Sequence record: LR745206.1
Direction: 5' to 3' (one strand)
Length of the DNA stretch: 64,000 bases
The translations under genes were made by a program, and so were the position numbers. The notes beneath the pieces were generated by a model. It was not told the origin of the DNA. It made no database searches and was given only the letters and a program-made list of their open reading frames with translations. This document shows, in pieces, positions 3 to 30,862 of the stretch (its first letter is position 1; each line of letters begins with the position of its first letter).

Positions 3-152
3 ATAGATATTGATTTATTAATAATATTCGCTTGGAACTATTCTAAAATGATTATAGATAAAACAAAATTCAAAAACTTTAATTATATGGTGGCTTTCCC
101 AGAGATTAAATACTTTAAAGAATCATCCAATATAAAATTAAATACACTTTAA
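3..152 (+). CDS. partial (5'-truncated) NDP-hexose C-methyltransferase, C-terminal domain
   Basis: Frame from nt 3 reads IDIDLLIIFAWNYSKMIIDKTKFKNFNYMVAFPEIK..., matching the D-x-L-I-L-A-W-N-[YF]...F-x-x-P-x-P tail of sugar C-methyltransferases. The stop overlaps the next ATG. Not in the ORF track. Confidence 0.55.
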   Translation: MDIDLLIIFAWNYSKMIIDKTKFKNFNYMVAFPEIKYFKESSNIKLNTL

Positions 153-1159
153 TGGAAATAGGATTCTTAATAACATCATATACACAAAAAACAATTAATA
201 ATGTTAATACTTGTTTATCATCTATAAGAAATTTCTATGATGATGTGAAGGTCGTTATAGTTGATAATTATAGTGGTGGTCCAGATATAAATTTACCAGG
301 AAATACATTCTATTATAAAAATGAGAATAATAGTTATGAAATGGGTGCTATATGGTATGCTATTGAGAAACATCCTGAGGTAGATAGATGGGTTATAATA
401 CACGATTCTTGTAAATTTATTAGTGAAATACCGGTTGATTTACAGAACGATAATAATAATTTCACACCATTTTGGTGTGATATACCAGAACATTACGCAC
501 CGACAATACCATTATTGATTAATCACCTAAAAAGTATTGGAATAGAATATGATGATGTTAAAACTGAAATTTGGAGATCTGTTTGTGGATTAATGTGTGT
601 TATAGATAAAAGTTTACTATCTAACTTATGTGATATTGGTCTTGATAAAATAAAACCTAATTCTAAGATAGATGCGGTTTGTTCGGAAATATTATTTGGA
701 TTAATCATAACCTATATAAATAAAGAGTCAATGAGACCAATACATGATAATCAAATATCAACATATATAAATAAAGAAAAAGATTGGGTATTTATTGAAA
801 AATATACAGGTGGGTTAAAGGCTGTTGATAATGGAACATATATTATATCAACTGGATCTATCTTACACCCAAGTAATAACTTTGAATATAATTATAAAGA
901 TAAAAGTTATAGTAATCTAGTTAATGATTATTTTGATATCGAAGATTTTTATAATCATATACTAAAAAGGGTAATAAGTGATGAAAATGCTATTAATGAA
1001 ATGGTTAATACATTCCCTAAATACTTGAGAATATCCGATGTGGATAGTAAAATATCAAAATTTGATCTTGTTAATTTATATTCTAGGGTAAGACATGAGG
1101 TATTTAATTTTATTTATTTTAAGGATTACTTTAATAAAAAATATAAAGAAATAATATGA
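152..1159 (+). CDS. putative glycosyltransferase (GT-A/GT2-like)
   Basis: N-terminal FLITSY...VVIVDN strand pattern, IIHDS DxD-like motif, position in a glycan cluster. Confidence 0.5.
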   Translation: MEIGFLITSYTQKTINNVNTCLSSIRNFYDDVKVVIVDNYSGGPDINLPGNTFYYKNENNSYEMGAIWYAIEKHPEVDRWVIIHDSCKFISEIPVDLQNDNNNFTPFWCDIPEHYAPTIPLLINHLKSIGIEYDDVKTEIWRSVCGLMCVIDKSLLSNLCDIGLDKIKPNSKIDAVCSEILFGLIITYINKESMRPIHDNQISTYINKEKDWVFIEKYTGGLKAVDNGTYIISTGSILHPSNNFEYNYKDKSYSNLVNDYFDIEDFYNHILKRVISDENAINEMVNTFPKYLRISDVDSKISKFDLVNLYSRVRHEVFNFIYFKDYFNKKYKEII

Positions 1160-1998
1160 AAAGTTTTGGATTCATAATACCAAGTTATTGTGATAGTGAC
1201 ATACACCTATCACAACTTAGAAGATGTTTAAAATCTATTAGAAATCATCATTCGGAAAAAATAATTATAATTGATGATTATTCAACAAAGGATATAAATT
1301 TGGTTGTTGTTGATTTTGATAATATTGAAATAATGAAATCACCAGTGAAAGGGGCTGGTGATATGGTTACATATCATCTTATGAAAGAACATCACCTTTT
1401 TGATAAAGCTATTATTATACAAGATAGTATGACTTTGGAGAAAAAGTTAGATAGGTTAGATGAAATAGACACTATTAGTTATTTATGGTACTTTACTAAT
1501 CACAGACACCATTGGGATCATATAGAGGAACCACAAGATGATTATAATATAAAACACGGGATAAAAGTACATGATGATTTACTTGTACATTGTATAGATA
1601 CCTTAATAGAGAAAGAAGAATTTAAGAAGTTTGCACAAGATATCTATTTTCAAAAAAATAAATGGTGTGGTTGTTTCGGGTGTCTTAGTATTGTCAATTA
1701 TGATTTTCTAGAGACTCTAAATAATAAAACTGGTATAATTGATATTATGTTAAAGATGAATAATAATAGACTCAGAAGGGCAGCTGAAAGTATGTTTGGA
1801 TTGGCATGTTTATTTACTTTAGGTGATAGTTTTTTAGAAACAGCTTATGATGGGCTTTACTATGATGGTGTTAATTTAGCTAGAGGTAGAAAGATATTAA
1901 ATTCAAAAGATATTGGATTAGACGAGTATAATGTTACTATCGACCAACATAGCAAAACAGAATATTTCTCTAAAATAGTTTTTTATAGAAATTTATAA
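1156..1998 (+). CDS. putative glycosyltransferase (GT2-like), paralog of upstream ORF
   Basis: FIIPSY...IIIIDD...IIIQDS. Shares W-x-x-[CV]-[FC]-G-x-[ML] and [AS]-E-x-[LM]-F-G-L motifs with 152..1159. Confidence 0.55.
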   Translation: MKSFGFIIPSYCDSDIHLSQLRRCLKSIRNHHSEKIIIIDDYSTKDINLVVVDFDNIEIMKSPVKGAGDMVTYHLMKEHHLFDKAIIIQDSMTLEKKLDRLDEIDTISYLWYFTNHRHHWDHIEEPQDDYNIKHGIKVHDDLLVHCIDTLIEKEEFKKFAQDIYFQKNKWCGCFGCLSIVNYDFLETLNNKTGIIDIMLKMNNNRLRRAAESMFGLACLFTLGDSFLETAYDGLYYDGVNLARGRKILNSKDIGLDEYNVTIDQHSKTEYFSKIVFYRNL

Positions 1999-2013
1999 AA
2001 TTAAATAATAAGT

Positions 2014-2859
2014 ATGAATGTATTAATAATAGGATCAACTGGGATGTTGGGTAACACACTTAAAAAATATCTAACTAAGATAAATATAGATTTTAAAACT
2101 CTGGATAGAAATGATATAGACTTATCTAAGTGTGGGTTTATTGAAATTGAAGAAAGTATAGTTAAATCCAATTGTGATGTTGTTATAAATTGCGCTGGTA
2201 TTGTTAAACAAAGAAAAAAAACACCAACTGCTGATTTTATTCATGTCAATTCATTAATACCACACTGGGTTGCTGATATATGTGAGAAAAAGGGTATTAA
2301 GATGATACATATAACAACGGATTGTGTATTTGATGGTCAATTAGGTGATTATAAAGAAAATGATATACATAACACATATGATGATTATGGAAGAAGTAAG
2401 TCTATGGGCGAACCTAACAATTGTACAGTTATTAGAACATCTATAATCGGTGAGGAGGAAAAAAACAAACTATCTTTATTAGAGTGGGTTAAATCAAATA
2501 AAAATGGTAATATAAATGGTTATAAAAATCATATATGGAATGGAGTAACTTGTCTTCAATTATCAAAAATAATGATGGATATAGCTAATAATATGAGTTA
2601 TTGGGAAGGTGTTAAGCATATATTTTCTAATAAAGTAAGCAAATATGATTTATCCAAAATGATAAATGAGATATATGATTTAAATATTAAAATAACTCCA
2701 ATTGATGATGTATATTCTGTTAATAGAACTATTGATACTATATATGATGTTGATGTATTTAACATACCAAATTTATATAAGCAGATAAAGGAAACAAAAG
2801 ACTTTCACAATGATATAAAAAATGAAGAATTAAAAAAATATTATGATAATCTATTATGA
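2014..2859 (+). CDS. rmlD: dTDP-4-dehydrorhamnose reductase-like SDR
   Basis: IGSTGMLG Rossmann motif, INCAG, HITTDCVFDG, YGRSK (YxxxK). Confidence 0.85.
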   Translation: MNVLIIGSTGMLGNTLKKYLTKINIDFKTLDRNDIDLSKCGFIEIEESIVKSNCDVVINCAGIVKQRKKTPTADFIHVNSLIPHWVADICEKKGIKMIHITTDCVFDGQLGDYKENDIHNTYDDYGRSKSMGEPNNCTVIRTSIIGEEEKNKLSLLEWVKSNKNGNINGYKNHIWNGVTCLQLSKIMMDIANNMSYWEGVKHIFSNKVSKYDLSKMINEIYDLNIKITPIDDVYSVNRTIDTIYDVDVFNIPNLYKQIKETKDFHNDIKNEELKKYYDNLL

Positions 2860-3962
2860 AAATAGCAATAGTAACTGGGTCAGCAGGACTCATAGGATCA
2901 CAAACATGTGATTTCCTTCATGAAAAGGGATATAAAATTATAGGAATTGATAATGATATGAGAGCTTACTTTTTTGGAGAAGACTCATCAACTAATGATT
3001 CTAGAATTTCATTAGAGAAAAAGCTTAATAACTATGAGCACAAAAATATTGATATACGTAATTATGATGATATAACAAAATTATTTGAAGAACATTCTAC
3101 CAATATTGATATTGTCATACATACAGCCGCTCAACCATCACATGACTGGGCAGCAAATGAACCATTAACTGACTTTGGAATAAATGCTACTGGTACAATG
3201 AATATGTTAGAAGCAACGAGATTAAATTGCCCTAAAGCAACATTTATTTTCACATCAACTAACAAAGTATATGGTGATAGACCAAATAATTCATATTATA
3301 ATAATATACCTGATGGTGATTATAATGGTATGATGATCAAAGAAGAAGAAAAAAGATGGGAATCCTACTTTATGTGTGGATCATTAGCAGCTATCGATGA
3401 GAATATGTCGATTGATAATTCAAAACATTCAATATTTGGGGCTTCTAAAGTAGCAGCCGATGTTATGTGTCAGGAATATGGTAAATATTTCGGAATGAAT
3501 GTTGTCGTTTTCAGAGGTGGATGTCTTACTGGACCAAATCACGCTGGTGCTGAATTACATGGATTTTTATCTTATCTAGTTAAATGTATAGTACACAATA
3601 AACACTATACTATATTTGGATACAAAGGTAAACAAGTTAGAGATAATATACATTCTTTGGATTTGGTTAATATGTTTTGGGAATATCATAAAAATCCGAA
3701 ACCTGGTAAAGTTTATAATGCTGGTGGAGGTAGAGATAATTCAACATCTATATTAGAAGCTATTGATAAGATCAATGAAATAGCTGGTACTAATTGGGAC
3801 AACTATACATTATCTGATGATAATAGGGTTGGTGATCATATTTGGTATATATCAGACTTATCTAAATTTAAAAATGATTACCCTAATTGGGATATAACAA
3901 TTGATTTAGATGAGACAATTAGACAAATGGTTGATTTTGAAAAAAATAAATTACAAAAATGA
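2856..3962 (+). CDS. NAD-dependent sugar epimerase/dehydratase (CDP-paratose 2-epimerase-like)
   Basis: TGSAGLIG, HTAAQPSHD, STNKVYGD, FGASK, FRGGCLTGP, GKQVRDNIH. Confidence 0.85.
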   Translation: MKIAIVTGSAGLIGSQTCDFLHEKGYKIIGIDNDMRAYFFGEDSSTNDSRISLEKKLNNYEHKNIDIRNYDDITKLFEEHSTNIDIVIHTAAQPSHDWAANEPLTDFGINATGTMNMLEATRLNCPKATFIFTSTNKVYGDRPNNSYYNNIPDGDYNGMMIKEEEKRWESYFMCGSLAAIDENMSIDNSKHSIFGASKVAADVMCQEYGKYFGMNVVVFRGGCLTGPNHAGAELHGFLSYLVKCIVHNKHYTIFGYKGKQVRDNIHSLDLVNMFWEYHKNPKPGKVYNAGGGRDNSTSILEAIDKINEIAGTNWDNYTLSDDNRVGDHIWYISDLSKFKNDYPNWDITIDLDETIRQMVDFEKNKLQK

Positions 3963-4807
3963 TTATAGTTACATTGATGGGTGGTATGGGTAATCAGATG
4001 TTCCAATATGCTTTGGCTAGAAACTTATCACTAAGATATAATGTTCCTCTTAAAATAGATTTATCATTTCTTAAAAATAGAAATATGGGTCATAATTTTG
4101 TTTATAGGGATTATGATTTAGATATATTTAATGTTCATGAGGATTTTGAAATAGGTCAATTGGATGTTGCTATTAAGATTACCGAGCCACATTTTCACTA
4201 CTCTCAAAATCTAATAGATTCGTTAGATAAATCATATGATAATAGTATGGATGTATCGGGTAATATTATATTAAATGGATATTGGCAAACTCCAAAGTAT
4301 TTTGGAGATTTTGAAGAACAAATAAGAAAAGATTTTATATTCCGGGATAAGGTTGAGGAATCTGATGATTATATAAAAGGTATGTTAAATAAAATAACAT
4401 CAACTAATTCCGTTCTTTTGAATGTTCGAAGAGCTGATTATCTAAATACAAATTATCATGGTGTTATGGGTATGGAATATATAAATGATGCTGTTAAAAT
4501 AATAGAATCTAAAGTAGAAAATCCACATTACTTTGTTTTTTCTGATGATGTTGATTGGTGTAAAGAGAATATTAAATTGGATAATATGACTGTTGTTGAT
4601 CATTCTTATAAGGGTGATAGATTCAGTTATTATTTACAATTGATGAAGAATTGTAAACACTTTATAATACCAAATAGCTCATTCGCTTGGTGGGCAGCTT
4701 GGTTAAATGAGGATAGTAATAAAATAGTAATAACACCAAAAAATTGGTTTACTGATAGTAATATCAATACAAATGATTTAATACCAGCTAATTGGATAAG
4801 AATATAA
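3959..4807 (+). CDS. GT11 alpha-1,2-fucosyltransferase-like glycosyltransferase
   Basis: GGMGNQMFQYA, GYWQ, NVRRADY, VFSDD, IIPNSSFAWWAAWL. Confidence 0.9.
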   Translation: MIIVTLMGGMGNQMFQYALARNLSLRYNVPLKIDLSFLKNRNMGHNFVYRDYDLDIFNVHEDFEIGQLDVAIKITEPHFHYSQNLIDSLDKSYDNSMDVSGNIILNGYWQTPKYFGDFEEQIRKDFIFRDKVEESDDYIKGMLNKITSTNSVLLNVRRADYLNTNYHGVMGMEYINDAVKIIESKVENPHYFVFSDDVDWCKENIKLDNMTVVDHSYKGDRFSYYLQLMKNCKHFIIPNSSFAWWAAWLNEDSNKIVITPKNWFTDSNINTNDLIPANWIRI

Positions 4808-4820
4808 AATAAATTAAGAT

Positions 4821-5390
4821 ATGGCGCATAAAGAACAAGATGATTATGTAAATAAAATAAAAGATAAATTTCCACAATTCTTTAAGAATAAAAAGGTGTT
4901 GGGTATAGGAACATTCAATGTTTGTGGTACAGAAGACCAATATTTCAGTGAATGTGATTATCAAGGATTAGATCTTGGTCCAGGTGAGGGTGTTGATATT
5001 GTTTGTCCAGCACAGGAGTATGATGCTCCTGATGAGACATTTGATGTTATTATTTCTTGTGAGTGTTGGGAACATAATCCTTATTATAAAGAAAGCATAC
5101 AAAATGCAGTTAGGATGTTAAAAAGTGGTGGATTTTTCATATTCACTTGTGCTACAACTGGTAGAGCTGTACATGGTGTTAAATATTTAGAAGAGGAGTG
5201 TAAATTACAATATAATAATTGGAAAACTATGCCAAATGTATCCAGGGAGAATTGGGATAATGATTACTATAAAAATTTAACAGAAGATGATATAAGAGAA
5301 TGTATAGATATCGATAATTCATTTAGTTCTTATGAATTTGAGGTTGAGGAAAATCATTTTGATTTATTTTTCTGGGGGATAAAAAAATAA
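4821..5390 (+). CDS. class I SAM-dependent methyltransferase
   Basis: KVLGIGT, GLDLGPGEGVD, FDVIISCECWEH, LKSGG. Confidence 0.75.
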   Translation: MAHKEQDDYVNKIKDKFPQFFKNKKVLGIGTFNVCGTEDQYFSECDYQGLDLGPGEGVDIVCPAQEYDAPDETFDVIISCECWEHNPYYKESIQNAVRMLKSGGFFIFTCATTGRAVHGVKYLEEECKLQYNNWKTMPNVSRENWDNDYYKNLTEDDIRECIDIDNSFSSYEFEVEENHFDLFFWGIKK

Positions 5391-5397
5391 ATGTAAT

Positions 5398-6192
5398 ATG
5401 ATAGAAGAAAAGGATATTGTTTTTGTAACTAATTCATTATATACGAAATGGATGGATTATCAATCAAAAATAATTAAAAAACTATTTCCGGAAAGTGAAC
5501 ATGTTATTATTAATGGTGGTACACCATATTTTAGATCCAAATGGCCAAATTCTTGGTTCTTTTGGATAGATGAGGTTAAAAAATCAGACAAAAAATATTA
5601 TATTCATATAGATGAAGATTTCTTTTTAACATCTAAAATAGAATTATTGAAAGCTATTGAGAAATTTGAAAATAACAATATAGATTTGATGGGCTGTCCA
5701 GATGGATATCACCATTTTAGAGGAGCTAATCCAGTTGCTATAAATACATTCCTAATGATTGGTAGAGTAAGTGATTTAAAAAGATTGGATAATGATATTT
5801 TAAGAAATGCTAAATATAATTTAGTATCTTATGATGGTAGTTCATACTCTTGGGTAAATGATATAGGTATAAAATTTAGAGAAGAATATAAAAATGATTT
5901 TAATTATCCATTTGAGGACCAAGGTGGATCTAATTTTATAAATGATCATGAACCTTATTATGCTTTCTTATGGTCTATGAAGGAGCTGGGTTGTAAGTTT
6001 GATTATTTATATCCTTTTTTCGATAATAGATTCAAATCTACTAATCCTAGATTAGAAAAAGATTCAGAAGATATCGGAATACATATGTGGTATACAAGAC
6101 AATGGGATAACACAATGGATGTTTGGGGATTACCAAATGTTGAAAGATATAATTTAGTTGAAAAGTATCTTAATGAATTATATGAAATCTAA
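5398..6192 (+). CDS. putative glycosyltransferase
   Basis: YYIHIDEDFF DxD motif, C-terminal IHMWY, cluster context. Confidence 0.45.
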   Translation: MIEEKDIVFVTNSLYTKWMDYQSKIIKKLFPESEHVIINGGTPYFRSKWPNSWFFWIDEVKKSDKKYYIHIDEDFFLTSKIELLKAIEKFENNNIDLMGCPDGYHHFRGANPVAINTFLMIGRVSDLKRLDNDILRNAKYNLVSYDGSSYSWVNDIGIKFREEYKNDFNYPFEDQGGSNFINDHEPYYAFLWSMKELGCKFDYLYPFFDNRFKSTNPRLEKDSEDIGIHMWYTRQWDNTMDVWGLPNVERYNLVEKYLNELYEI

Positions 6193-6361
6193 AAAACATA
6201 TTAGTTCATCTTATGGTATTGATGTAGAGGATAAATTAACTTCTATGTTATCAGAAGAATTGGCTAAGGAAATTGATAAGAGTATTCTAAGTGGTCTTGG
6301 TATTGAACCAGATAGATATAAACGTAGAAAGAATTCTATTAATAAGATATTTAAACAATAG
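6182..6361 (+). CDS. small protein with major-capsid-like helix and C-terminal R-x-x-K tag
   Basis: Likely start ATG 6182. YGIDVEDKLTSMLSEELAKEIDKSIL, ends RRKNSINKIFKQ. Confidence 0.6.
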   Translation: MKSKKHISSSYGIDVEDKLTSMLSEELAKEIDKSILSGLGIEPDRYKRRKNSINKIFKQ

Positions 6362-6869
6362 CAAATTCTATTTTAGCAAAAAGATATTCATCAGAGGAAT
6401 ATCCATTATCATTTAAATAAGATTTATAATCCATTTCACCTATCCCGGTGAATTTATATAAAGGAATTCGGTAACTATCAGGGTTTTGAACTTGTTGAGC
6501 TTTTCCATTAAAGTATATGATGAATTTAGAATCAAATCCTTGATCAACTAATCTATCTCTAGTTTCACTCATTCTATCAAGTATATTTTCGAATTCTTGT
6601 TCGATACCTTCTTTTTTAAGACACTTTTTTAGTTGTATTATTGTATAAAATTCTGGACCACTCCCAATATAATATGACCAATCTTCATCTTGGATCAAAT
6701 CAGCAAAATAAGGTTTGAATTCATCTGATATATCTCTATTTCCTTGATATAATCTTTGTCTATTCTTATATTGAGTATAAGATTTTAAACGTCCTAAATT
6801 ATGACTGATATCTTTCAAAGATTTTAATAAATCATCTTCGTCAGATTCAAACATTTTTAAATATTTCAT
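6351..6869 (-). CDS. hypothetical protein with N-terminal capsid-targeting-like (CTS-like) motif
   Basis: True start likely ATG 6869 (MKYLKMFESD), directly after TAATATATA. Confidence 0.7.
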   Translation of the reverse strand: MKYLKMFESDEDDLLKSLKDISHNLGRLKSYTQYKNRQRLYQGNRDISDEFKPYFADLIQDEDWSYYIGSGPEFYTIIQLKKCLKKEGIEQEFENILDRMSETRDRLVDQGFDSKFIIYFNGKAQQVQNPDSYRIPLYKFTGIGEMDYKSYLNDNGYSSDEYLFAKIEFAIV

Positions 6870-6873
6870 AAAG

Positions 6874-6882
6874 TATATATTA
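6874..6882 (-). promoter_or_regulatory. putative phage late promoter TAATATATA
   Basis: Exact motif just upstream of ATG 6869, recurrent across the window. Confidence 0.55.
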
Positions 6883-7479
6883 AATCTTCTGAATAATAAC
6901 CGGTAGAGTACCAAGTTCAAGAACTTTACTTTTATTAAGTAAGAACTCAATGTCGTAGAAGTTGAAGTGGAAAGTCATTGTAAATTCTTTAGCATTTACT
7001 TTTTGTTGAGAATAGTTAAAATCATTATCTGATAAAGATTTCAATACAATTTCGTAAAATTTTATAACATAAATAGCATCTCGATGTATGTCAAGAGCTG
7101 TTATCGTAAATGGATTTAAGAAAGAGTTTTCAACGTCTAAATAATGTTTATTAATTATATCAAACATTAACCAATAATTTAAATCAGAATCAACAGATCT
7201 AAAAGTAACTTGTAATTCACGAGTCGTTATTATATCCTGTATATTAGTAGCTGGTTTAAATTGTCTTTCTTTACCTCTCATAGTAATTTGTTTTGGCATA
7301 TCAAAAGAAATACCAGGGAAGTTAACACTCTTCATAGTTGAGTTTATATAATCTATTACATTCTCATACTGTATCCAATTCTTTTCTAGAATTGGAGTAT
7401 AAGTCTCAAGTATTTCTGATGGTAAGAAATCACCTGGTAGGTTAAATATAAACTGACTGGATTGGCTACTTAATCTCAT
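6880..7479 (-). CDS. putative tail tube/baseplate-type structural protein
   Basis: Beta-rich pattern LQVTFRSVDSDLNYWLMFD...FTMTFHFNFYD, reminiscent of T4 gp19/gp54-fold proteins, in a late operon. Confidence 0.4.
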   Translation of the reverse strand: MRLSSQSSQFIFNLPGDFLPSEILETYTPILEKNWIQYENVIDYINSTMKSVNFPGISFDMPKQITMRGKERQFKPATNIQDIITTRELQVTFRSVDSDLNYWLMFDIINKHYLDVENSFLNPFTITALDIHRDAIYVIKFYEIVLKSLSDNDFNYSQQKVNAKEFTMTFHFNFYDIEFLLNKSKVLELGTLPVIIQKI

Positions 7480-11043: not shown

Positions 11044-12018
11044 TTATAAATCAGCGAAGAAATCATCTTCTTCTTCTGCCGCTCCTGATGTAGCTGGTTG
11101 GCTATTTGATTCCGAGAAATTATTCTCAAAGTCAAAATCATCAGATGATGGACTTGATTTAGTGTTTGAGTTAAAGCTTCCAGAAGATTTACCTGTTAAG
11201 AAGTTACTAATTTCTGTAATTTTAGCTTGTTGCTCATCGTTCAATGGTTTTGGAGAAAAGTCTTCTAAATTATGACCTCGGTCTAATAAGAATTCTTTAA
11301 TCTTGCTTTGAACTTTACCATCAATCTTACCTTCTTCATTAAGAGGAGCGTTTTTGAATTCACCCTTTTCTTTGAAATAAATAGGTAGTGATGTTGCCTC
11401 TGGTCTGAACATACTCATCTTGTAGTCAGGATAAGTTTCATCACCAGTTTGGATTTCTTTAACTACAAGAACAAAATCTTTACCAGCAGATAAGTCAAAT
11501 ACGTTACATTGAACTCCAGAAATTTCTCCATTTCTTTCTGCTGAAATTTTATCTTTAATAGTTTTACCATACTGCATAATCATTATCTGACCAACTAGTT
11601 CTGGTTGTTGTTCGTCTTCAAGAACAAGTACATAAGAGTAATACTTCTTAGAATACTTTAACATTTTTGATTTTTCAATCAAAATTGCATTCTTTGAATT
11701 TTGCATTGAGTAATAAAGATCTGTAAGAGGACATTTTTCACCAAAATTCTTTGGACTATCGAACCAACCTCTTAGTTCTTTTGGATTTTTAATATCAACA
11801 TAATGAGTTATTTTCTCAATTGCTGATTGACCCACTTTACCATCTTGAGTCAAGTTAGGTAGAAATCTAACTACTGATCTCCATCCTTTTTTCTTATCTT
11901 TCGCTTTTGAAAGATCAACACGGTAGATACCGTCATTGTTTGTTGCTTTTTGTTCATTTAAGAAGTCCATCTTTGAGTCAAGACCACCATTAAATAAATC
12001 ATCTAATTCTTCTGCCAT
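11044..12018 (-). CDS. gp32: single-stranded DNA-binding protein, T4 gp32-like
   Basis: VVRFLPN, CP, KKYYSYVLV, YGKTIKDKI, FDLSAGKDF, YPDYKMSMF, acidic tail ending DDFFADL. Confidence 0.85.
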   Translation of the reverse strand: MAEELDDLFNGGLDSKMDFLNEQKATNNDGIYRVDLSKAKDKKKGWRSVVRFLPNLTQDGKVGQSAIEKITHYVDIKNPKELRGWFDSPKNFGEKCPLTDLYYSMQNSKNAILIEKSKMLKYSKKYYSYVLVLEDEQQPELVGQIMIMQYGKTIKDKISAERNGEISGVQCNVFDLSAGKDFVLVVKEIQTGDETYPDYKMSMFRPEATSLPIYFKEKGEFKNAPLNEEGKIDGKVQSKIKEFLLDRGHNLEDFSPKPLNDEQQAKITEISNFLTGKSSGSFNSNTKSSPSSDDFDFENNFSESNSQPATSGAAEEEDDFFADL

Positions 12019-12129: not shown

Positions 12130-12621
12130 TTATAAGAATTTTTTCACCAACTCTTTATTATACTCCCCGTTTGGATCCGAAACGAGTTCTGATGTTATTA
12201 AATTCTGGTATTGTATATCATTAACTTTATAAAGTTTTATATCCATAATAAATAAAGGTACAAGATCACCAGTTTCTTCATCCACAAAATCCTCCTTACG
12301 TATATCACCAATTGGTCTGAATCCTGTAGCATCATAAAGCCTTTCCAAACATTCATAGAAAGTATCCATATCTTCTATATCCAATACGAAATTACTAAGA
12401 TTAATATATGGTAAACCAATTAGATTATTTGGAGCATGTCCACCCATTGATGTAGTATATCCAAATTCTTTAACACTTAATGTTGTATTGTATTGATAAT
12501 TATCAGTTATATCATAGAAAAATTCAGATATATCCAATTCACTTGGGAATCTTTTTATTTCTGAATCTGTCATATCATTAGATGTTAATTCAAACACTTT
12601 ATATTTCTTTAGATATTTCAA
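12130..12621 (-). CDS. hypothetical protein, CTS-like N-terminus
   Basis: MKYLKKYKVFE. Confidence 0.7.
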   Translation of the reverse strand: MKYLKKYKVFELTSNDMTDSEIKRFPSELDISEFFYDITDNYQYNTTLSVKEFGYTTSMGGHAPNNLIGLPYINLSNFVLDIEDMDTFYECLERLYDATGFRPIGDIRKEDFVDEETGDLVPLFIMDIKLYKVNDIQYQNLITSELVSDPNGEYNKELVKKFL

Positions 12622-13850
12622 AATTTTAATAATATTTTAACTGTATAATCATAGATATCTCTATTGTCATCAAATCTTCTATCCTCTCTACTCATGTCAA
12701 ATATGACATCATCATATTCCAATGTTGGTAATATACTCGGTAGCACTTCATCCAAATCAGATTCTAATTTTTTAAGATTCATAGTTCCTGATGTGTGTGT
12801 ATCTCTATGACCACCTATATCAATCAATACACATGGAACATACATATCTAAAATATTTATAGGACTATATTTTTGTAGTTTTTGTATAGCATATTTATGT
12901 TTAGATAAAACATCACTATTAACAACTTCATAATCCATTATGTTAAAATTAACACATTGATATTTTTTATCTGTTACATATTCTTCGGATTCATCTTGTC
13001 TAATATAAATTTCATCTTTCCAACTACCAAGTTTAAATGTTGGTGCAAGAATATCTCTTATAATTTCATTCATTATCATTAAATACCTTTTCTCATCCGT
13101 TAAATTTGAAACTGGCATTGTGCCATTATATTTTCTTTTATTTGGTTCATCAATTTTTTCATAATCACCATATATTATAGATGTTGTTACCCATTTATCT
13201 TTATCGGTTGGTATATCATCCCAGATTTCATAAAGTCTATCATTAACATAATCAATATCTACCTTTTTCATAGCTTCCCAAGCTTTTGATAAGTGTCTAT
13301 TTATTATATCAAACCAACCATCCCCAATAAAATGATCTACCCAATGCTTTATCTCTGATTGATCAAGTTTATTATCACTATTATAATGTATGTCATTATA
13401 AAAATCATAAATGCTATATTTTTGTTTAATAGATTCATTCAAATCTTTCTCATCTAATAATCTACCATAATCATCTTCTGAGTAAATTAGTAAAGATATA
13501 CCACTTGAACCAAATTCCTCATCACCATAAACATAAATAAATCTATCCAATTCCATCCAATCACCACCACTAATTTCAACATCAATACCATAACCAGCAT
13601 CTTTTCTAAAACAATATTCTTCTATTCTCTCAACAGTTTCTTTTATATCATTATATGTGAAAAACTCAGTTGAAATTTGAACATCCAATGCTTTAATAGA
13701 ATCCGTAAACATAGGTGGTGTATAATTAACTTCTTTAATATTTATATCAAACCCAGAATCAGACAATTCTAGTGTCATATCTCTTACATCCTCAATTAAA
13801 TTTGAAAAAGAGGAAGATTCAAATAATTTATATTTGGTTAAATATTTCAT
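12618..13850 (-). CDS. hypothetical protein, CTS-like N-terminus and internal LNES site
   Basis: MKYLTKYKLFES...DLNESIKQK. Confidence 0.7.
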   Translation of the reverse strand: MKYLTKYKLFESSSFSNLIEDVRDMTLELSDSGFDINIKEVNYTPPMFTDSIKALDVQISTEFFTYNDIKETVERIEEYCFRKDAGYGIDVEISGGDWMELDRFIYVYGDEEFGSSGISLLIYSEDDYGRLLDEKDLNESIKQKYSIYDFYNDIHYNSDNKLDQSEIKHWVDHFIGDGWFDIINRHLSKAWEAMKKVDIDYVNDRLYEIWDDIPTDKDKWVTTSIIYGDYEKIDEPNKRKYNGTMPVSNLTDEKRYLMIMNEIIRDILAPTFKLGSWKDEIYIRQDESEEYVTDKKYQCVNFNIMDYEVVNSDVLSKHKYAIQKLQKYSPINILDMYVPCVLIDIGGHRDTHTSGTMNLKKLESDLDEVLPSILPTLEYDDVIFDMSREDRRFDDNRDIYDYTVKILLKF

Positions 13851-14260
13851 GGTCTTATTAATAATCTTATGATACTATCATCACCATTTTCAAAAAATAT
13901 CTCTGATGGTTTATAAATAGTTTTAAATCTATCAACATCCTCTTTTAATTGATTAACTATATTATAATAACTATCAAAATCTTCCATCTTTGCTTTATCA
14001 TAAAAATCATGGTGAAAAGATAATTCAAAACCCTCAACACAAGTTAGTAATTGTCTTTGATCACATTTTGCACCCAAAAGTTTCATACCACTGAAATCAT
14101 TATGTGCCCAATCCATCTTACTATTAGGATTAAAATAAACAATATCAATAACAGTAGCTGATCCAGATTCACAAAGGTCAAATGTATGGGCAAAGAAGTT
14201 TTGCAAATCATCTTTAGATAACTCTTGATTATTTTCATTAAATCTTCTTAAATGATTCAT
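13847..14260 (-). CDS. hypothetical protein, CTS-like N-terminus
   Basis: MNHLRRFNEN. Confidence 0.7.
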   Translation of the reverse strand: MNHLRRFNENNQELSKDDLQNFFAHTFDLCESGSATVIDIVYFNPNSKMDWAHNDFSGMKLLGAKCDQRQLLTCVEGFELSFHHDFYDKAKMEDFDSYYNIVNQLKEDVDRFKTIYKPSEIFFENGDDSIIRLLIRP

Positions 14261-15573
14261 TTTTTTCTAATAACTTTTATTCTCTCAGTTTGATATTCCA
14301 TTATATCTACCTCTTGGTGTTGTTTCAATAAATCAACCATACCTTGATACATCTGAACTGTTATTCGACAATCAGTAATAGCATCGTGATATCCAGACAT
14401 ATTAATACCAAGAGCAGGTCCTATTTTTGACATTGATGATGATATTAAACCACCATCTCTTGGTGACTTACCGATAGCATCAATCATCTCTTTATATTTA
14501 ACATCACTTTCAGCTAGTTTCTGTAATAATGGTAAAAAATATAATTGTATTAGCATTTTAGTATCAAATACCTCATTTTTAATTTTATGTCCATATCTAC
14601 CAGCTAACATAGCCATATCAAAGGCAGCATTTTGTGCAATTAATAAACAAGGCTCATAATCAGAGATGAATTGAAAAAAGTCATTAATAACTTGTTCTTC
14701 ATCTTTATATTTATAACCACCAGATCCATATCTGTTAAATCCTAGAACCCATTTAGTCCTATCTTCTGGTTCGTTATATTTAGACTTTGTATCTTTTGTT
14801 AGTTTTATTTTCTCATCAAATTTACCAAGTTCGCTAAATTTATTATTATTAAAATCACACTCAGTTACTAAACATGAAACTTGTGTTAGTTGTTCATTCC
14901 TAGGACCATTTAATCCAGTAGTTTCTGTATCTAACCAAACCCAAGGCATATCAGTTTTAGAATCTAACCAAGATAGTATTTCTGGTATAGTTTTATACCA
15001 CATCTTATTTTCATTTATCGATTCTGATATCTTATTAATATCAAATTTATATTCTTTACCAATAGCATCAGAATATGTTATTTTATTTATGTTTTTAACT
15101 GTATATTTATAGTCTGGTTTAATATATTTCTTACCAGTGCCCTTTTTAACATAAGCAATTGTTAAGTGTGGTTTATAATCAGGATATTCATTTGAATTTG
15201 GTAACTCAGATAATTTATCAAACAAATATTGTAATGATCCCTTTGGTTCTACATTGAACTTAACAACATCAAATTTAGAATTCTCAAATATATCAACACC
15301 ATTAACCTCAATATCTATATCACCATCAAAGGAGTCGAATACAGACTTAACTTCTTCTATTGATACTTCCTTATGTAAACCATATAATAATGTAAGGTGT
15401 GGTCTCTTTTGTATACCATAAGTCGAATCACCATCTTCCTCATAGATATCTTCTGGATCAATCCAAGATGTAATTTCTTCCCAGTTTGAAACTGGGACAT
15501 CAATCATAACACAACCATATTTGTGTCCGTTTATAGATTCTTTTATAAATTGCTTGTATTTCTTTAATTTCAT
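14257..15573 (-). CDS. Acb1/gp57B-like 2H phosphodiesterase fused to DEDDh (DnaQ-like) exonuclease, CTS-like N-terminus
   Basis: MKLKKYKQFIKES. Two HxT motifs (RPHLTLLYG, KPHLTIAY), then LDTETTG, QNAAFD, HDAITD. Confidence 0.85.
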   Translation of the reverse strand: MKLKKYKQFIKESINGHKYGCVMIDVPVSNWEEITSWIDPEDIYEEDGDSTYGIQKRPHLTLLYGLHKEVSIEEVKSVFDSFDGDIDIEVNGVDIFENSKFDVVKFNVEPKGSLQYLFDKLSELPNSNEYPDYKPHLTIAYVKKGTGKKYIKPDYKYTVKNINKITYSDAIGKEYKFDINKISESINENKMWYKTIPEILSWLDSKTDMPWVWLDTETTGLNGPRNEQLTQVSCLVTECDFNNNKFSELGKFDEKIKLTKDTKSKYNEPEDRTKWVLGFNRYGSGGYKYKDEEQVINDFFQFISDYEPCLLIAQNAAFDMAMLAGRYGHKIKNEVFDTKMLIQLYFLPLLQKLAESDVKYKEMIDAIGKSPRDGGLISSSMSKIGPALGINMSGYHDAITDCRITVQMYQGMVDLLKQHQEVDIMEYQTERIKVIRKK

Positions 15574-15657: not shown

Positions 15658-15819
15658 ATGGAAAGATTCTCAATGAAAGAAGTATTAAAGAATAAGTTTG
15701 GTGAGTCTGAAAAGAACATCAAAACAAGTAGATCTACAAAAAGAGCTACTAATAAAGCTTCTGATGGAAAATATATCGTTAAAATTGTTGATGGTATTAA
15801 ATACATGATATTAAAATAA
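15658..15819 (+). CDS. small basic hypothetical protein (53 aa)
   Basis: MERFSMKEVLKNKFG...YMILK. Follows a host-type promoter and abuts the next ORF. Not in the ORF track. Confidence 0.6.
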   Translation: MERFSMKEVLKNKFGESEKNIKTSRSTKRATNKASDGKYIVKIVDGIKYMILK

Positions 15820-15820
15820 T

Positions 15821-16105
15821 ATGTTTAATAAAAACAGTGTGGATAGAAATCATATTCTCACTTTTCTAAATTATAGAGAAAGGGGTGGGGTTTCAATAAC
15901 TTGTACTTGTGGTAAGGAGATTATAACATTAGATGATTTTGAAATATCTGATGGTAGAATGCACAATGACCAACATACTGTTAATATTGAACCAATCACA
16001 GGTAAATTTATCCCATTTCAACTAACCGAAGTTTACTACAATGATGTTGTTTTACATATAGCATCAATTGAAAGAAACGATAAAATCAATAAAATAATAA
16101 AATAA
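15821..16105 (+). CDS. small protein with CxC motif and C-terminal tag
   Basis: ITCTCGKE, ends ERNDKINKIIK. Confidence 0.65.
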   Translation: MFNKNSVDRNHILTFLNYRERGGVSITCTCGKEIITLDDFEISDGRMHNDQHTVNIEPITGKFIPFQLTEVYYNDVVLHIASIERNDKINKIIK

Positions 16106-18843: not shown

Positions 18844-18874
18844 TTGTTTTTGTTAAAAAAATTATCTACCTTTG
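18844..18874 (+). promoter_or_regulatory. Bacteroidota-type promoter TTG-N20-TACCTTTG
   Basis: TTG 18844..18846, TAnnTTTG 18867..18874. Confidence 0.6.
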
Positions 18875-18891
18875 TGTGTAAAATCAATATA

Positions 18892-19437
18892 GTGTTAAGT
18901 AATAAAAAGCAAAAGTGGTCAAAAAATAGAAAGCGTCTAAGGGATGCTTTAGAAAGCAATGTGCATGAGAACCAAATAGAAAATCTGGTAGAAAATTTCA
19001 AACTTTTAAGACCAGATGAATTTGAAACTTGTAAAGGATCATTATTGTTAATATCCATCAAAAGTGGATCTAAAGAATGTTCTGAGTTTTTAATAGAAAA
19101 TGGTGCTATTTGTAATCCTAACCTTATATTATTTGAGTGTAAATATGATAACATACACATTGTGTATGACTTAATAGATAATTTAGTTGAAAAATATCCA
19201 AATGCTTTCACACAAAAATTTTCAATAAATAAGAAATCCTTAATATCAAGAGTTATTGATCCATCAAAAGTTAGTGATAATGATAAAAGGATTGATTATG
19301 TTTTTGATCAAATGTTATTCTTCGGATATAAAGAAGTAAGAGAAGTAATTGATGAAAACTATAAATCTAAACCTGAAAAATGGTCTAAATTAATATCAGT
19401 GATTAGGGAAATTAAATTAAGAGAATTAGGAATATGA
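18892..19437 (+). CDS. ankyrin-like repeat protein with C-terminal tag
   Basis: Probable GTG start 18892. LLISIKSGSKECSEFLIENGAICN resembles an ankyrin repeat. Ends IREIKLRELGI. Confidence 0.55.
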   Translation: MLSNKKQKWSKNRKRLRDALESNVHENQIENLVENFKLLRPDEFETCKGSLLLISIKSGSKECSEFLIENGAICNPNLILFECKYDNIHIVYDLIDNLVEKYPNAFTQKFSINKKSLISRVIDPSKVSDNDKRIDYVFDQMLFFGYKEVREVIDENYKSKPEKWSKLISVIREIKLRELGI

Positions 19438-19832
19438 AATTAGTATATAAAAACGATAAATATCCTTGTGTTTTAAAAAGTGAAATGGAACCAAACATGT
19501 GGTATAATATGGAACCTATTAAACTAACAGTGACCATACCAATGACTGATTACTTTAATATTAGAACAGATATTAAAGATTGTAATGATCAGTTCCATTT
19601 CAAACTACTTGTTGATAAAAGAGATAGGGTGAATAACTTTAGCAATGAGTTTGTTGCCGGCCTTTGGTCAATAGATTCAAACTTTGAAAGATCAACAATT
19701 ACATCTAGCTTTAGTAAGGGTGTGGTTAATGTAATATTCAAATTACACATAGTTGATAGAGAGCTTAATGATAAAAGTGAATTAAGGGATTTAATAATAA
19801 ATGATTTATTTAAAAGTGAAAAAGCCGAGTAG
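19434..19832 (+). CDS. hypothetical protein with C-terminal tag variant
   Basis: Ends LRDLIINDLFKSEKAE. Confidence 0.6.
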   Translation: MKLVYKNDKYPCVLKSEMEPNMWYNMEPIKLTVTIPMTDYFNIRTDIKDCNDQFHFKLLVDKRDRVNNFSNEFVAGLWSIDSNFERSTITSSFSKGVVNVIFKLHIVDRELNDKSELRDLIINDLFKSEKAE

Positions 19833-26258: not shown

Positions 26259-26438
26259 ATGAAAACATCTAAGATACATATTGGTACAATAACTAAAGAT
26301 CAAATTCTTACATCAAATAGGAAGATATCTAGAGAGATTGAATTGGAAAATTCAATTGGGTGGGTGTCTATGAATAAAGTTCATAAGTCTAAGAAAACAT
26401 ACACAAGAAAACCTAAATACAAAGAAACCTACTCTTAA
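26259..26438 (+). CDS. small basic protein (possible ArfA-like ribosome rescue factor)
   Basis: Start ATG 26259, C-terminal VHKSKKTYTRKPKYK. Confidence 0.45.
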   Translation: MKTSKIHIGTITKDQILTSNRKISREIELENSIGWVSMNKVHKSKKTYTRKPKYKETYS

Positions 26439-26635
26439 TTGAATAGGTTTTTTATTTTCTTTTTTCTTGATTCCACTTTCCCGTCTTTTAGATAATCACT
26501 ATATCTTATATTTTTATTTAAATTTTCACATAAGTAATCACAATAAGCACTTTGTAGATTCAAATTTTCAGATATATATTCAGAATAAGATATATTCTTT
26601 TCTAGGCTTTCGGCTATATAATCCTCATAATTCAT
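26435..26635 (-). CDS. small 14-residue-repeat protein with C-terminal tag
   Basis: Start ATG 26635. Y-x-[DE]-Y-[IL]-x-E-[SN]-L repeats, ends [11 protein letters not shown]. Confidence 0.65.
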   Translation of the reverse strand: MNYEDYIAESLEKNISYSEYISENLNLQSAYCDYLCENLNKNIRYSDYLKDGKVESRKKKIKNLFN

Positions 26636-26831
26636 AAATATTTTTAATTTTTTTCTTTCTACTACCAGACCTATCAGTCCAAACATCAGAATGGAAGGTT
26701 AATTGCATCCATTTGTTATTTTGATAAATATAATTCACACAATCAATAGTATTATAATAAATATCACCTTCTATTGGTTCTGATGGTACAGAAGTTGAAA
26801 CACTTAACTGATATTTAAATGGATCTATCAC
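26625..26831 (-). CDS. small protein with tail-fibre-like motif and C-terminal tag
   Basis: [13 protein letters not shown]...YIYQNNKW, ends [12 protein letters not shown]. Confidence 0.6.
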
Positions 26832-27910: not shown

Positions 27911-28242
27911 TATCTTAATATCTTTGTTAATTTTATTTCTCTATATATTTGTTTAGTTGTATCTGTTAACTTTATATACACATATCTATTATAAACTATA
28001 ACAAACTCACGCTCACCATTTATCGGTGATAACATTGTTCTGTAATTCATAATAGGCATTTCATCAACTATTTCACAAAATATATCCTCAACATTTTCAA
28101 TTTTACAATCTTCTATCATTGATAACCTCTCACAAAAATAATTCATAAATGGTGTTGAGGTTTCTATAACTTGGTTAAGTAATTTATCGGTCTTAAAACT
28201 ATCAGGAGCCCATTCTGATATTTCAACATACCAATCAATCAC
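27910..28242 (-). CDS. hypothetical protein with C-terminal tag
   Basis: Ends [11 protein letters not shown]. Confidence 0.65.
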
Positions 28243-30801: not shown

Positions 30802-30854
30802 ATTTGATTTATATAAAAAAATAAAAAAGTTTTAATAATTCGAATATATATAAC

Positions 30855-30862
30855 TATATTTG
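30855..30862 (+). promoter_or_regulatory. Bacteroidota-type -7 element TATATTTG
   Basis: Immediately upstream of ATG 30867. No clear -33 element. Confidence 0.5.

What the first reader, a model, noticed from the sequence alone, without database searches (positions are those of the whole stretch)
6182..6361. Tagged mini-protein that is essentially a fragment of a T4-like major capsid protein
Seen: ~59 aa containing SYGIDVEDKLTSMLSEELAKEIDKSILSGL, followed by the tag. Established (recalled, not aligned): gp23-family capsid proteins contain HG[MI]DA[DE]AEL[ST]xILxxEIxxEI[ND]RE[VI][VI]. Inference: a free-standing capsid backbone helix could be a decoy for capsid-sensing defences (CapRel-type sensors recognise capsid proteins), or an interference factor against capsid assembly of co-infecting phages.
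Basis: partly seen in the sequence, partly recalled or inferred. Interest (0 to 1): 0.82.

Follow-up and report, generated by a model that had tools for sequence, protein, structure and literature searches.

The report
Tagged mini-copy of capsid spine helix
A huge uncultured phage encodes a conserved 59-residue protein made of a copy of the long "spine" helix of T4-type capsid proteins plus a short C-terminal peptide tag, and about 9% of the phage's other proteins carry that kind of tag, so this is a new small-protein family whose function is still unproven.

Summary
Window 6182-6361 (+) is a real gene in the 634.8-kb uncultured phage LR745206.1. It encodes 59 aa, or 62 aa from the ATG at 6173. 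Residues 9-39 match the spine helix of gp23-family capsid proteins: all 17 family members hit Pfam Gp23 (best E 3.7e-9), and T4 gp24/gp23 are the top PDB hits. The family has 193 clusters at 50% identity. Nearly all are free-standing proteins of 45-80 aa, they are under purifying selection, and they are absent from cultured phages.

The "tag" is also real. In this genome 94 of 994 ORFs end in [ILV]-R-D-x-K-[IL]-x-x-[IL]-L. It is selected at the protein level and sits on otherwise unrelated small proteins. The mini-protein's tail is only a weak, basic variant of it.

The same genome has other tagged pieces of head proteins: two more gp23 segments, a scaffold-repeat piece, and a compact HK97-fold paralogue whose tag is invariant.

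My best guess (about 0.35) is that the tag docks proteins to the assembling head and the mini-protein is a head-assembly accessory. The mini-protein keeps the canonical EIDR motif, which the phage's own invariant capsid protein lacks.

The parts
6182..6361 (+). Mini-protein gene: 59 aa, or 62 aa from the alternative in-frame ATG at 6173. The stop codon TAG is at 6359-6361.
   Evidence: ORF list and sequence. 16 homologues of 62-75 aa. 193 clusters in the representative search. dN/dS below 1.
6206..6298 (+). Residues 9-39 (SSYGIDVEDKLTSMLSEELAKEIDKSILSGL): the gp23-family spine-helix module.
   Evidence: Pfam Gp23 profile positions 164-194. T4 gp24 184-220 and gp23 269-307. Spine-helix assignment from PMC9546572. 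hhalign to the resident capsid protein, residues 334-371. AlphaFold2 predicts a helix over residues 14-38.
6299..6358 (+). Residues 40-59: turn G-I-E-P-D, then a basic amphipathic helix RYKRRKNSINKIFKQ (the 'tag').
   Evidence: This is the most conserved part of the family: L-G, E-P, R and NSINKI are invariant. A second helix is predicted. The match to the genome-wide tag PSSM is weak.
5398..6192 (+). Upstream 264-aa gene that looks like a glycosyltransferase (DxD-like HIDEDFF, judged by eye). Its end overlaps the mini gene by 11 nt.
   Evidence: No Pfam or PHROG hit. In relatives the upstream gene varies but is usually a sugar or methyl transferase.
152..6192 (+). Sugar-modification gene cluster, which the mini gene terminates.
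   Evidence: The window's fucosyltransferase-like gene matches P-SSM2 family-11 glycosyltransferase DNA. Orthologous clusters carry NTP_transferase, epimerase/dehydratase, Glyco_transf_11 and methyltransferase Pfam hits.
6880..7479 (-). Convergent 199-aa gene, possibly a gp3-like tail tube terminator. In relatives it is the constant tail-to-tail neighbour of the mini gene.
   Evidence: Its only PDB sequence hit is T4 gp3, E 0.072, covering residues 41-177. In relatives the 3' ends of the two genes overlap by 17 nt.
6351..6950 (-). Extra ORF between the mini gene and the 199-aa gene, specific to this lineage. Its 3' end overlaps the mini gene's 3' end.
   Evidence: Present here. Absent in L001, L002 and L022-L026, and replaced by a DUF7448 gene in L019.
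26435..26686 (-). Another tagged mini-protein in the window: a piece of the scaffold repeat region plus the tail [11 protein letters not shown].
   Evidence: phmmer E 1e-40 to the repeats of the protease-scaffold fusion protein at record 198486-200669. Tag PSSM score 8.2.

Best explanation
**Proposal.** The gene encodes a small two-helix protein.
- Helix 1 is a re-used copy of the gp23-family spine helix. It keeps that helix's conserved acidic and hydrophobic residues.
- Helix 2 is a basic amphipathic C-terminal peptide, a variant of a tag that this phage clade attaches to about 9% of its proteins.
- I propose that the tag is a docking peptide that brings proteins to the assembling head, either the prohead core or the shell interior. 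It would work like the capsid targeting sequence of T4 internal proteins, the C-terminal tail of the HK97 protease, or encapsulin cargo-loading peptides.
- Through helix 1 the mini-protein would occupy a site that normally contacts a capsid-protein spine helix. That would make it a small head-assembly accessory or head-internal protein.

**Shown.**
- Homology of helix 1 to gp23.
- Conservation and purifying selection on the gene.
- The tag is real and selected at the protein level.
- The tag occurs on an HK97-fold paralogue and on pieces of scaffold and capsid protein.

**Inferred.**
- That the tag targets proteins to the head.
- That the mini-protein's weakly matching tail works as that tag.
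- That helix 1 binds a head component.
For: - **Helix homology.**
- **Family size and selection.** 193 clusters, almost all small free-standing proteins, whose matches run through the tail. Selection is purifying.
- **The tag.** 94 of 994 ORFs carry it within the last 20 residues, against 30 internal matches, a roughly 30-fold density excess. Codon usage inside the tag equals genome usage. The bodies of 93 carriers fall into 92 unrelated BLAST groups. The tag is also present in the sister genome, where it is better conserved than the protein bodies (54% against 36%).
- **Link to the head.**
  - A 243-aa protein about 5 kb downstream of the capsid gene is a conserved family (12 clusters, down to 32% identity) with an invariant QRDIKI[DN]x[LV]LD tail.
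  - Its model is a compact HK97 fold (pLDDT 82; Foldseek E 2e-7 to encapsulin and phage capsid proteins, including T4 gp23/gp24).
  - Tagged small ORFs match Pfam Gp23 positions 132-163 and 308-356, flanking the mini-protein's 164-194.
  - Another matches the scaffold repeats (E 1e-40).
- **Precedent.** Unrelated small proteins that share only a short head-targeting peptide are known: the T4 internal proteins (PMC3012670).
Against: - The mini-protein's tail matches the canonical tag only weakly (2 bits; 0.6% of internal windows do as well).
- Helix 1 differs from the invariant resident spine helix at the EIDR positions. That is odd for a mimic meant to act on the phage's own head.
- The gene lies at the end of a sugar-modification cluster, not in the head module.
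- Most tagged genes are small ORFs in arrays that look like early genes.
- T4-type late-promoter motifs are not enriched upstream of tagged genes (2 of 94 against 38 of 900).
- The scaffold's own C-terminus is not tag-like.
- In the AlphaFold2 model of the HK97 paralogue, the tag helix is a low-confidence free helix that is not docked to anything.
- There is no binding or virion-composition data at all.
Confidence: 0.35

Rival explanations
1. Decoy for host capsid sensors. The free helix would bind a defence protein that recognises capsid protein and keep it from firing.
For: Capsid-protein sensing by bacterial defences is common; Avs7 and Dsr1 are examples. The genome carries several distinct capsid-protein pieces. 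The other pieces are lineage-specific, with no tblastn match in the sister genome, which would fit fast turnover in an arms race.
Against: The mini-protein does not resemble the resident capsid helix at its key motif, so a sensor tuned to this phage's capsid protein would not obviously be fooled. The STAND sensors described recognise folded shapes over large interfaces, not a single helix. A mimic that binds a sensor could just as well trigger it. There is no association with known anti-defence genes.
Confidence: 0.12
2. Interference with co-infecting T4-like phages. A dominant-negative canonical spine helix would poison the head assembly of competitors, while the resident capsid protein, with a divergent helix, would be immune.
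For: The mini-protein keeps E-[IL]-A-x-E-I-D-[RK]-x-I-L, as in the gp23 consensus. The resident capsid protein has an invariant ELSQTISKQIV instead. Free-standing gp23-fragment genes recur in non-structural regions of other phages.
Against: By profile score the mini family is no closer to T4 gp23 or gp24 (12.5 and 16.8 bits) than to the resident capsid protein (18.8 bits). The sequences that score higher are themselves fragments, not bona fide capsid proteins. This idea does not explain the highly conserved tail.
Confidence: 0.12
3. Accessory of the sugar-modification cluster. The helix-plus-tail module would act as a subunit or targeting module for glycosyl- or methyl-transferases, for example directing them to the virion.
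For: The mini gene is always the last gene of a sugar or methyl-transferase cluster and overlaps the preceding gene by 11-14 nt. One relative, P0046, is an FkbM methyltransferase fused in frame to the whole module.
Against: The upstream gene is not constant: it is glycosyltransferase-like, DUF8361-like, UDP-galactopyranose-mutase-like (by eye) or methyltransferase, and in L005 it is an unrelated HExxH protein. The constant neighbour is the convergent 199-aa gene. These contexts may all descend from one ancestral arrangement. The fusion could be a frameshift artefact of two overlapping ORFs.
Confidence: 0.12
4. The tail is a docking or degradation motif for a partner outside the head, such as the sliding clamp (as with T4 gp33, gp55 and gp43), RNA polymerase or a protease. 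The mini-protein would then be a small regulator, and its gp23 similarity would be incidental to its function.
For: The [IL]-x-x-[IL]-[LF] pattern at a C-terminus resembles, from memory only, the T4 clamp-binding tails, which are described as short hydrophobic C-terminal epitopes. Most tag carriers look like early small ORFs.
Against: The T4 clamp-binding epitope is hydrophobic and acidic, whereas this tail is basic. The tag on an HK97-fold paralogue and on scaffold and capsid pieces has no rationale under this model. The C-termini of the DNA polymerase pieces in the window are not tag-like.
Confidence: 0.1
5. Non-functional remnant of a capsid gene duplication that happens to be an ORF.
For: The genome contains several lineage-specific capsid-protein fragments.
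Against: The family has 193 clusters at 50% identity. Synteny is conserved on contigs up to 476 kb. dN/dS is below 1, with dN = 0 and dS = 0.12 in a close pair. Residues are invariant in both the helix and the tail.
Confidence: 0.02

Closest known systems
Spine helix (P domain) of T4 gp23/gp24, Pfam PF07068 Gp23
   Same: The residue pattern matches over about 31-40 residues: [YH]-G-I-D-x-x-x-x-L-x-x-x-L-S-E-E-[IL]-A-x-E-I-D-[RK]-x-I-L. It maps to gp24 184-220 and gp23 269-307.
   Different: Only this helix is present, with a little of the preceding strand in longer relatives. There is no A domain, E-loop, N-arm or insertion domain. The helix is followed by a conserved L-G-I-E-P-D turn and a basic helix that capsid proteins lack.
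Capsid targeting sequence (CTS) of T4 internal proteins
   Same: A short conserved terminal peptide shared by otherwise unrelated, highly diverse small phage proteins (PMC3012670). Here about 93 unrelated proteins share the tag.
   Different: The T4 CTS is N-terminal and is removed by the prohead protease at an L/I-x-E site (from my own knowledge). This tag is C-terminal, has a different sequence, and encapsidation has not been shown.
Encapsulin cargo-loading peptides, the C-terminal capsid-targeting tail of the HK97 protease, and the C-terminal coat-binding helix-turn-helix of the P22 scaffolding protein
   Same: All are C-terminal peptides of about 10-20 residues that dock proteins to the inside of HK97-fold shells (from my own knowledge). 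Here the tag co-occurs with an HK97-fold paralogue.
   Different: There is no sequence similarity, and no docking site has been identified. In this genome the tag sits on the HK97-fold protein itself as well as on putative cargo.
Gol peptide of T4 gp23, the trigger of the Lit protease
   Same: Both are short linear segments of gp23 that have a biological activity of their own.
   Different: Gol lies nearer the N-terminus of gp23 (from memory, about residues 93-122), not in the spine helix. It is part of gp23, not a separate gene.
Phage-encoded fragment mimics of larger proteins, such as T4 Srd and Srh, which resemble pieces of sigma factors
   Same: Both are small phage proteins that resemble one segment of a much larger protein (from my own knowledge).
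   Different: Srd and Srh mimic host proteins. This protein mimics a phage structural protein.

Membership tests
Pfam PF07068 Gp23 (T4-type major capsid protein) | Sequence score at or above the family gathering threshold (24.4 bits) | tested here: not met
   The window protein scores 20.2 bits, E 4.4e-4. Some relatives do pass: the best of the 17 reaches E 3.7e-9, and P0074 scores 34 bits.
Pfam PF07068 Gp23 (T4-type major capsid protein) | A complete HK97 fold (N-arm, E-loop, P domain, A domain) able to form capsomers | tested here: not met
   Only profile positions 164-194 of 376 are matched. The model is a two-helix hairpin. Foldseek finds no PDB match.
Pfam PF07068 Gp23 (T4-type major capsid protein) | Homology of the matched segment to the spine helix | tested here: met
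   All 17 members hit Gp23. T4 gp24 and gp23 rank among the top PDB hits, gp24 first. hhalign to the resident capsid protein gives E 1.2e-4 at residues 334-371.
Genome-wide C-terminal tag of this phage clade ([ILV]-R-[DEN]-x-K-[IL]-x-x-[IL]-[LGIF]) | Motif match within the last 20 residues | tested here: inconclusive
   The tail KRRKNSINKIFK scores 2.0 bits on the tag PSSM; 0.6% of internal windows score as high. It is closest to a basic sub-variant, R-K-x-K-I-x-N-I-F, seen on other very small ORFs.
T4-type internal proteins with a capsid targeting sequence | N-terminal CTS followed by a prohead-protease cleavage site | tested here: not met
   The conserved peptide is C-terminal and the N-terminus is variable. 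No conserved cleavage motif was seen next to the tag.
T4-type internal proteins with a capsid targeting sequence | Presence of the protein in proheads or virions | not testable with these tools
   The phage is uncultured and no proteomic data are available.
Sliding-clamp-binding proteins of T4 type (gp33, gp55, gp43 tails) | [quoted passage not shown] | tested here: inconclusive
   The hydrophobic spacing is similar, but the tail is basic where the T4 epitope is acidic. The clade's gp55, gp33 and gp45 homologues were not located.
Anti-defence decoy of capsid-sensing systems | Binds or blocks a capsid-sensing defence protein | not testable with these tools
   This needs co-expression or binding assays. 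The only indirect point is that the mini-protein's helix differs from the resident capsid helix.

The most novel reading that the evidence does not exclude
The C-terminal tag is a cargo-loading signal that sends about 90 unrelated small proteins, roughly 9% of the coding capacity of a 634-kb phage, into the head or into an encapsulin-like compartment built by the tagged compact HK97-fold paralogue. That would give a large set of pre-made proteins that could be injected with the DNA. Under this reading, the tagged pieces of capsid protein, scaffold and protease, including this mini-protein, would be re-used parts of the loading and assembly machinery.
Probability: 0.2. Interest if true: 0.9.

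Novelty: new variant of a known kind. Interest (0 to 1): 0.7.

Why it matters
If the mini-protein acts on capsid assembly, on competitors, or on host capsid sensors, it would be the first example of a phage keeping a single capsid helix as a separate gene. The family is large (193 clusters), unannotated, and absent from cultured phages.

The wider finding is a protein-level C-terminal tag on about 9% of the genes of one of the largest known phages, including an HK97-fold paralogue. It suggests an addressing system in huge phages that I could not find described in the papers searched. It also gives a direct handle on the function of about 90 orphan proteins: find the tag's partner. The tag could be useful as an encapsidation or targeting tool as well.

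Tried and rejected
- **Foldseek of the mini-protein model against the PDB.** No hits; a 62-residue helical hairpin at pLDDT 68 carries too little information.
- **Sigma-70-type promoter scan.** No more sites than in shuffled sequence.
- **T4-type late promoter TATAAATA.** Not enriched upstream of tagged genes (2 of 94 against 38 of 900). It is too frequent in a 28% GC genome to be informative.
- **The tag as a DNA-level element.** Rejected. Codon usage inside the tag equals genome usage, and the flanks share only ordinary terminators.
- **The tag as the conserved end of one large paralogous family.** Rejected. The bodies of the carriers fall into 92 unrelated groups.
- **The tag as a mimic of the scaffold's own C-terminus.** Rejected. 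The PSSM score is -21.
- **The tag as a general feature of T4-like marine phages.** Not supported. No tags were seen at the C-termini of 27 ORFs in the first 50 kb of P-SSM2.
- **TAG read-through of the mini gene.** Rejected by eye. The continuation is short, looks non-coding and overlaps the opposite-strand ORF.
- **The mini-protein as a recent copy of the resident capsid protein.** Rejected. Only 12 of 33 residues are identical, and the resident helix is invariant and different.
- **Pfam and PHROG annotation of tagged proteins.** Essentially no hits.
- **Literature searches for the tag or for capsid-fragment decoys.** Nothing relevant found.
- **Parent proteins for the remaining basic-tagged small ORFs** (window 48039, window 51539, record 308165, record 608315). 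Nothing significant found.

Full report
**1. What is there.**
The window is positions 434001-498000 of LR745206.1, an unannotated 634,780-bp 'uncultured phage' with 28.5% GC in the window. At 6182-6361 (+) lies an ORF of 59 aa, MKSKKHISSSYGIDVEDKLTSMLSEELAKEIDKSILSGLGIEPDRYKRRKNSILNKIFKQ minus the stray letter, that is MKSKKHISSSYGIDVEDKLTSMLSEELAKEIDKSILSGLGIEPDRYKRRKNSINKIFKQ. An in-frame ATG at 6173 gives the 62-aa form used in public gene calls. The ORF overlaps the end of the upstream 264-aa gene by 11 nt. Its 3' end overlaps an opposite-strand ORF.

**2. Is the capsid resemblance real?**
- The single protein hits Pfam Gp23 at E 4.4e-4. This is below the gathering score. Residues 9-39 match profile positions 164-194.
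- It hits PHROG 138 'major head protein' at E 1.7e-4.
- All 17 aligned relatives hit Gp23, best E 3.7e-9.
- A family profile against the PDB returns nine weak hits. T4 gp24 (184-220, E 0.024) ranks first and T4 gp23 (269-307, E 1.2) is among them.
- gp23 residues 292, 306 and 307 are described as P-domain spine-helix residues in PMC9546572.
- The phage's own capsid protein is at record 200752-202434 (Pfam Gp23 E 1.8e-26). hhalign of the mini family against its family aligns 38 columns at residues 334-371 (E 1.2e-4, 32% identity).

The homology is limited to the spine helix, plus part of the preceding strand in the longer relatives.

**3. Is it a gene?**
- A word-index search found 16 homologues of 62-75 aa.
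- An exhaustive profile search found 193 clusters at 50% identity with E at or below 1e-3. Nearly all are 45-80 aa, and most matches run to the very end of the profile, so they include the tail.
- The residues Y-G, D, S, A, I-D, L, L-G, E-P, R and N-S-I-N-K-I are invariant among the 16 close homologues. The tail is the best-conserved part.
- dN/dS is 0.12-0.6 in most pairs. One close pair has dN = 0 and dS = 0.12.
- Among about 50,000 GenBank phage records, only the two uncultured huge phages have it.
- AlphaFold2 predicts a helix, an L-G-I-E-P-D turn and a second helix, at mean pLDDT 68. Foldseek found nothing.

**4. Context.**
In every long relative the mini gene is the last gene of a sugar or methyl-transferase cluster. 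These clusters carry NTP-transferase, epimerase/dehydratase, family-11 glycosyltransferase and methyltransferase genes.
- The mini gene overlaps the previous gene by 11-14 nt.
- It is tail-to-tail with a 199-aa gene, their 3' ends overlapping by 17 nt. That gene is followed by genes of about 640, 137 and 305 aa and then gp32.
- The only PDB hit of the 199-aa protein is the T4 gp3 tail tube terminator, E 0.07.
- The upstream gene varies and the convergent neighbour is constant.
- One relative is an FkbM methyltransferase fused in frame to the whole module.

**5. The tag.**
- In the window, a strict C-terminal pattern occurs 11 times within the last 20 residues of ORFs and twice elsewhere.
- I fetched the whole genome. 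There, 94 of 994 ORFs carry it at the C-terminus against 30 internal matches, a roughly 30-fold density excess.
- Codon usage at the conserved positions equals genome usage, so selection is on the peptide.
- With the tag removed, 93 carriers form 92 unrelated BLAST groups.
- The sister genome LR756502 has the tag too. In homologous pairs the tag is better conserved than the body, 54% against 36%.
- Cyanophage P-SSM2 shows none in the region examined.
- The mini-protein's tail is only a weak match: 2 bits, with 0.6% of internal windows scoring as high. It groups with a basic sub-variant, R-K-x-K-I-x-N-I-F, found on very small ORFs.

**6. A series of head-protein pieces.**
A search with the resident capsid protein against all ORFs of the genome finds several small ORFs that match different parts of it.
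- Record 291371-291880 matches the N-terminal region.
- Record 93236 and record 554784 match the GMG..AQP..LAG segment.
- Record 222206 is a 61-aa ORF with a tag. It matches Pfam Gp23 positions 132-163, immediately before the mini-protein's segment (E 0.006).
- Record 255010 is a 75-aa ORF with a tag. It matches Gp23 positions 308-356 (E 2e-4).
- Window 26435-26686 (-) is a piece of the repeats of the protease-scaffold fusion protein plus a tag (E 1e-40).

None of the pieces tested (records 255010, 222206 and 189479) was found in the sister genome by tblastn. The mini-protein is the old, widely conserved member of this series.

**7. A tagged HK97-fold paralogue.**
Record 207176-207907 encodes a 243-aa protein about 5 kb downstream of the capsid gene.
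- It belongs to a conserved family of 12 clusters, down to 32% identity, and the family includes the sister genome.
- Its tail, QRDIKI[DN]x[LV]LD, is invariant.
- Its AlphaFold2 model (pLDDT 82, pTM 0.76) is a compact HK97 fold. Foldseek matches reach E 2e-7 to encapsulins and phage capsid proteins, including T4 gp23/gp24.
- The tag helix itself is modelled as a free, low-confidence helix.

**8. Relation to the resident capsid protein.**
The resident capsid protein is extremely conserved, at least 74% identical over more than 120 clusters on contigs up to 642 kb. Its spine helix, TGMDIVQKMES.LVNELSQTISKQIV, is invariant. The mini-protein shares 12 of 33 residues with it and keeps E-[IL]-A-x-E-I-D-[RK]-x-I-L, as in the gp23 consensus. 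So the mini-protein is not a recent copy and does not track the resident helix. By profile score it is no closer to T4 gp23 or gp24 than to the resident protein. The closest larger sequences are themselves capsid-protein fragments in non-structural regions of other phages.

**9. Interpretation.**
- *Firm.* This is a new, conserved family of small proteins built from a re-used gp23 spine helix and a conserved basic C-terminal helix. It sits in a phage clade that uses a peptide tag on about 9% of its proteins.
- *Favoured mechanism (about 0.35).* The tag docks proteins to the assembling head, and the mini-protein is a head-assembly accessory or head-internal protein. This rests on the tag's occurrence on an HK97-fold paralogue and on scaffold and capsid pieces. 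It also rests on the T4 precedent of diverse internal proteins united only by a capsid targeting sequence (PMC3012670).
- *Against it.* The tail's match to the tag is weak. Helix 1 is unlike the resident helix. The gene sits outside the head module. Most tagged genes look early.
A dead remnant is very unlikely.

**10. Novelty.**
No annotation, family name or paper was found for the mini family or for the tag. Eight of the 16 close homologues weakly hit PHROG 14392, a 47-aa profile of unknown function. That may be a distant counterpart in isolated phages and was not followed up.

Noticed in passing
Whole genome LR745206.1. In the window, for example: 15815-16105 +, 18844-19437 +, 19434-19832 +, 21488-21892 +, 27910-28242 -, 30825-31136 +, 35366-35683 +, 53642-54031 -, 54931-55368 -, 57263-57508 -, 63164-63529 +: A C-terminal peptide tag, [ILV]-R-[DEN]-x-K-[IL]-x-x-[IL]-[LGIF], ends 94 of 994 ORFs, about 30 times denser at C-termini than inside proteins. 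It is selected at the protein level and sits on about 90 mutually unrelated small proteins. It is also present in the sister genome LR756502. Its partner and function are unknown.
   Followed up: partly
L010:11176-11907 (record 207176-207907), outside the window: A 243-aa compact HK97-fold paralogue of the capsid protein (AlphaFold2 pLDDT 82; Foldseek hits to encapsulins and phage capsids). Its C-terminal tag QRDIKI[DN]x[LV]LD is invariant across 12 clusters. It could be a vertex protein or a separate shell protein.
   Followed up: partly
Window 26435-26686 (-): An 83-aa ORF made of copies of the 14-residue repeat of the protease-scaffold protein, ending in [11 protein letters not shown]. An intrinsic-terminator-like hairpin overlaps its stop codon.
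   Followed up: partly
Record 222206-222391 +, 255010-255249 -, 291371-291880 +, 93236-93520 +, 554784-555317 -, 189479-189649 + (loci L007, L009-L011 and L016): Further small ORFs that match other segments of the resident capsid protein: the N-terminal region, Gp23 positions 132-163, and Gp23 positions 308-356. One possibly matches the prohead protease (record 189479; phmmer E 0.025, weak). Several end in the basic tag variant. The three tested by tblastn (records 222206, 255010 and 189479) have no match in the sister genome.
   Followed up: partly
L010:2546-4669 (record 198546-200669): The gene immediately upstream of the capsid gene encodes a 707-aa protein. It has a T4 gp21-like prohead protease N-terminus (Peptidase_S77, weak, E 0.005), about 12 tandem 14-residue repeats (NxSYSEYLAENLDK) and an acidic region. 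It is apparently a protease-scaffold fusion.
   Followed up: partly
Window 26625-26834 (-) and 26828-27910 (-): A stop-to-stop ORF with a tail-fibre-like motif (GDIYYNT...W) and a tag ([12 protein letters not shown]) starts 7 nt before the end of the 360-aa ORF upstream of it, in another frame. This could be a frameshift, programmed or an assembly error.
   Followed up: no
Window 46112-50920 (+): A three-gene cluster with strong PHROG matches: 22605 (E 1e-220; a weaker hit is annotated ATPase), 19072 (a weaker hit is annotated 'sporulation protein') and 35217. From memory it resembles the bacterial PrkA, YeaH and SpoVR trio. A 46-aa tagged ORF (48039-48179) sits between the first two genes.
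   Followed up: no
Window 12130-15573 (-): DNA polymerase-like sequence (PHROG 192 and 17 hits on the 438-aa exonuclease part) appears to be split over four consecutive overlapping ORFs of 438, 137, 410 and 163 aa. The gp32 gene lies just downstream of them at 11044-12018 (PHROG 224, E 1.6e-20).
   Followed up: no
Window 6435-6452 (+): A terminator-like hairpin (TTCACCTATCCCGGTGAA followed by a T-rich run) lies 74 nt downstream of the mini gene's stop codon, inside the opposite-strand ORF 6351-6950.
   Followed up: no
L021:6742-7585, L028:6014-8048 and L030:1476-1940 (other phages): Pairs or single ORFs that carry only the strand-plus-spine-helix part of Gp23 sit among non-structural genes (Mom, HU, NUDIX, methyltransferases) in unrelated phage contigs, one of them apparently GC-rich (judged from P0146's amino-acid composition). 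Free-standing gp23 fragments may be a recurrent phenomenon.
   Followed up: partly
Window 51539-51694 (-): A 51-aa tagged ORF ending FRKYKIKNIFGG lies between a PHROG 6386 'transcription antiterminator' gene (51697-52233) and a gene that looks like dCMP deaminase by eye (51130-51549). Its tail resembles, from memory, the MinD membrane-targeting sequence.
   Followed up: no
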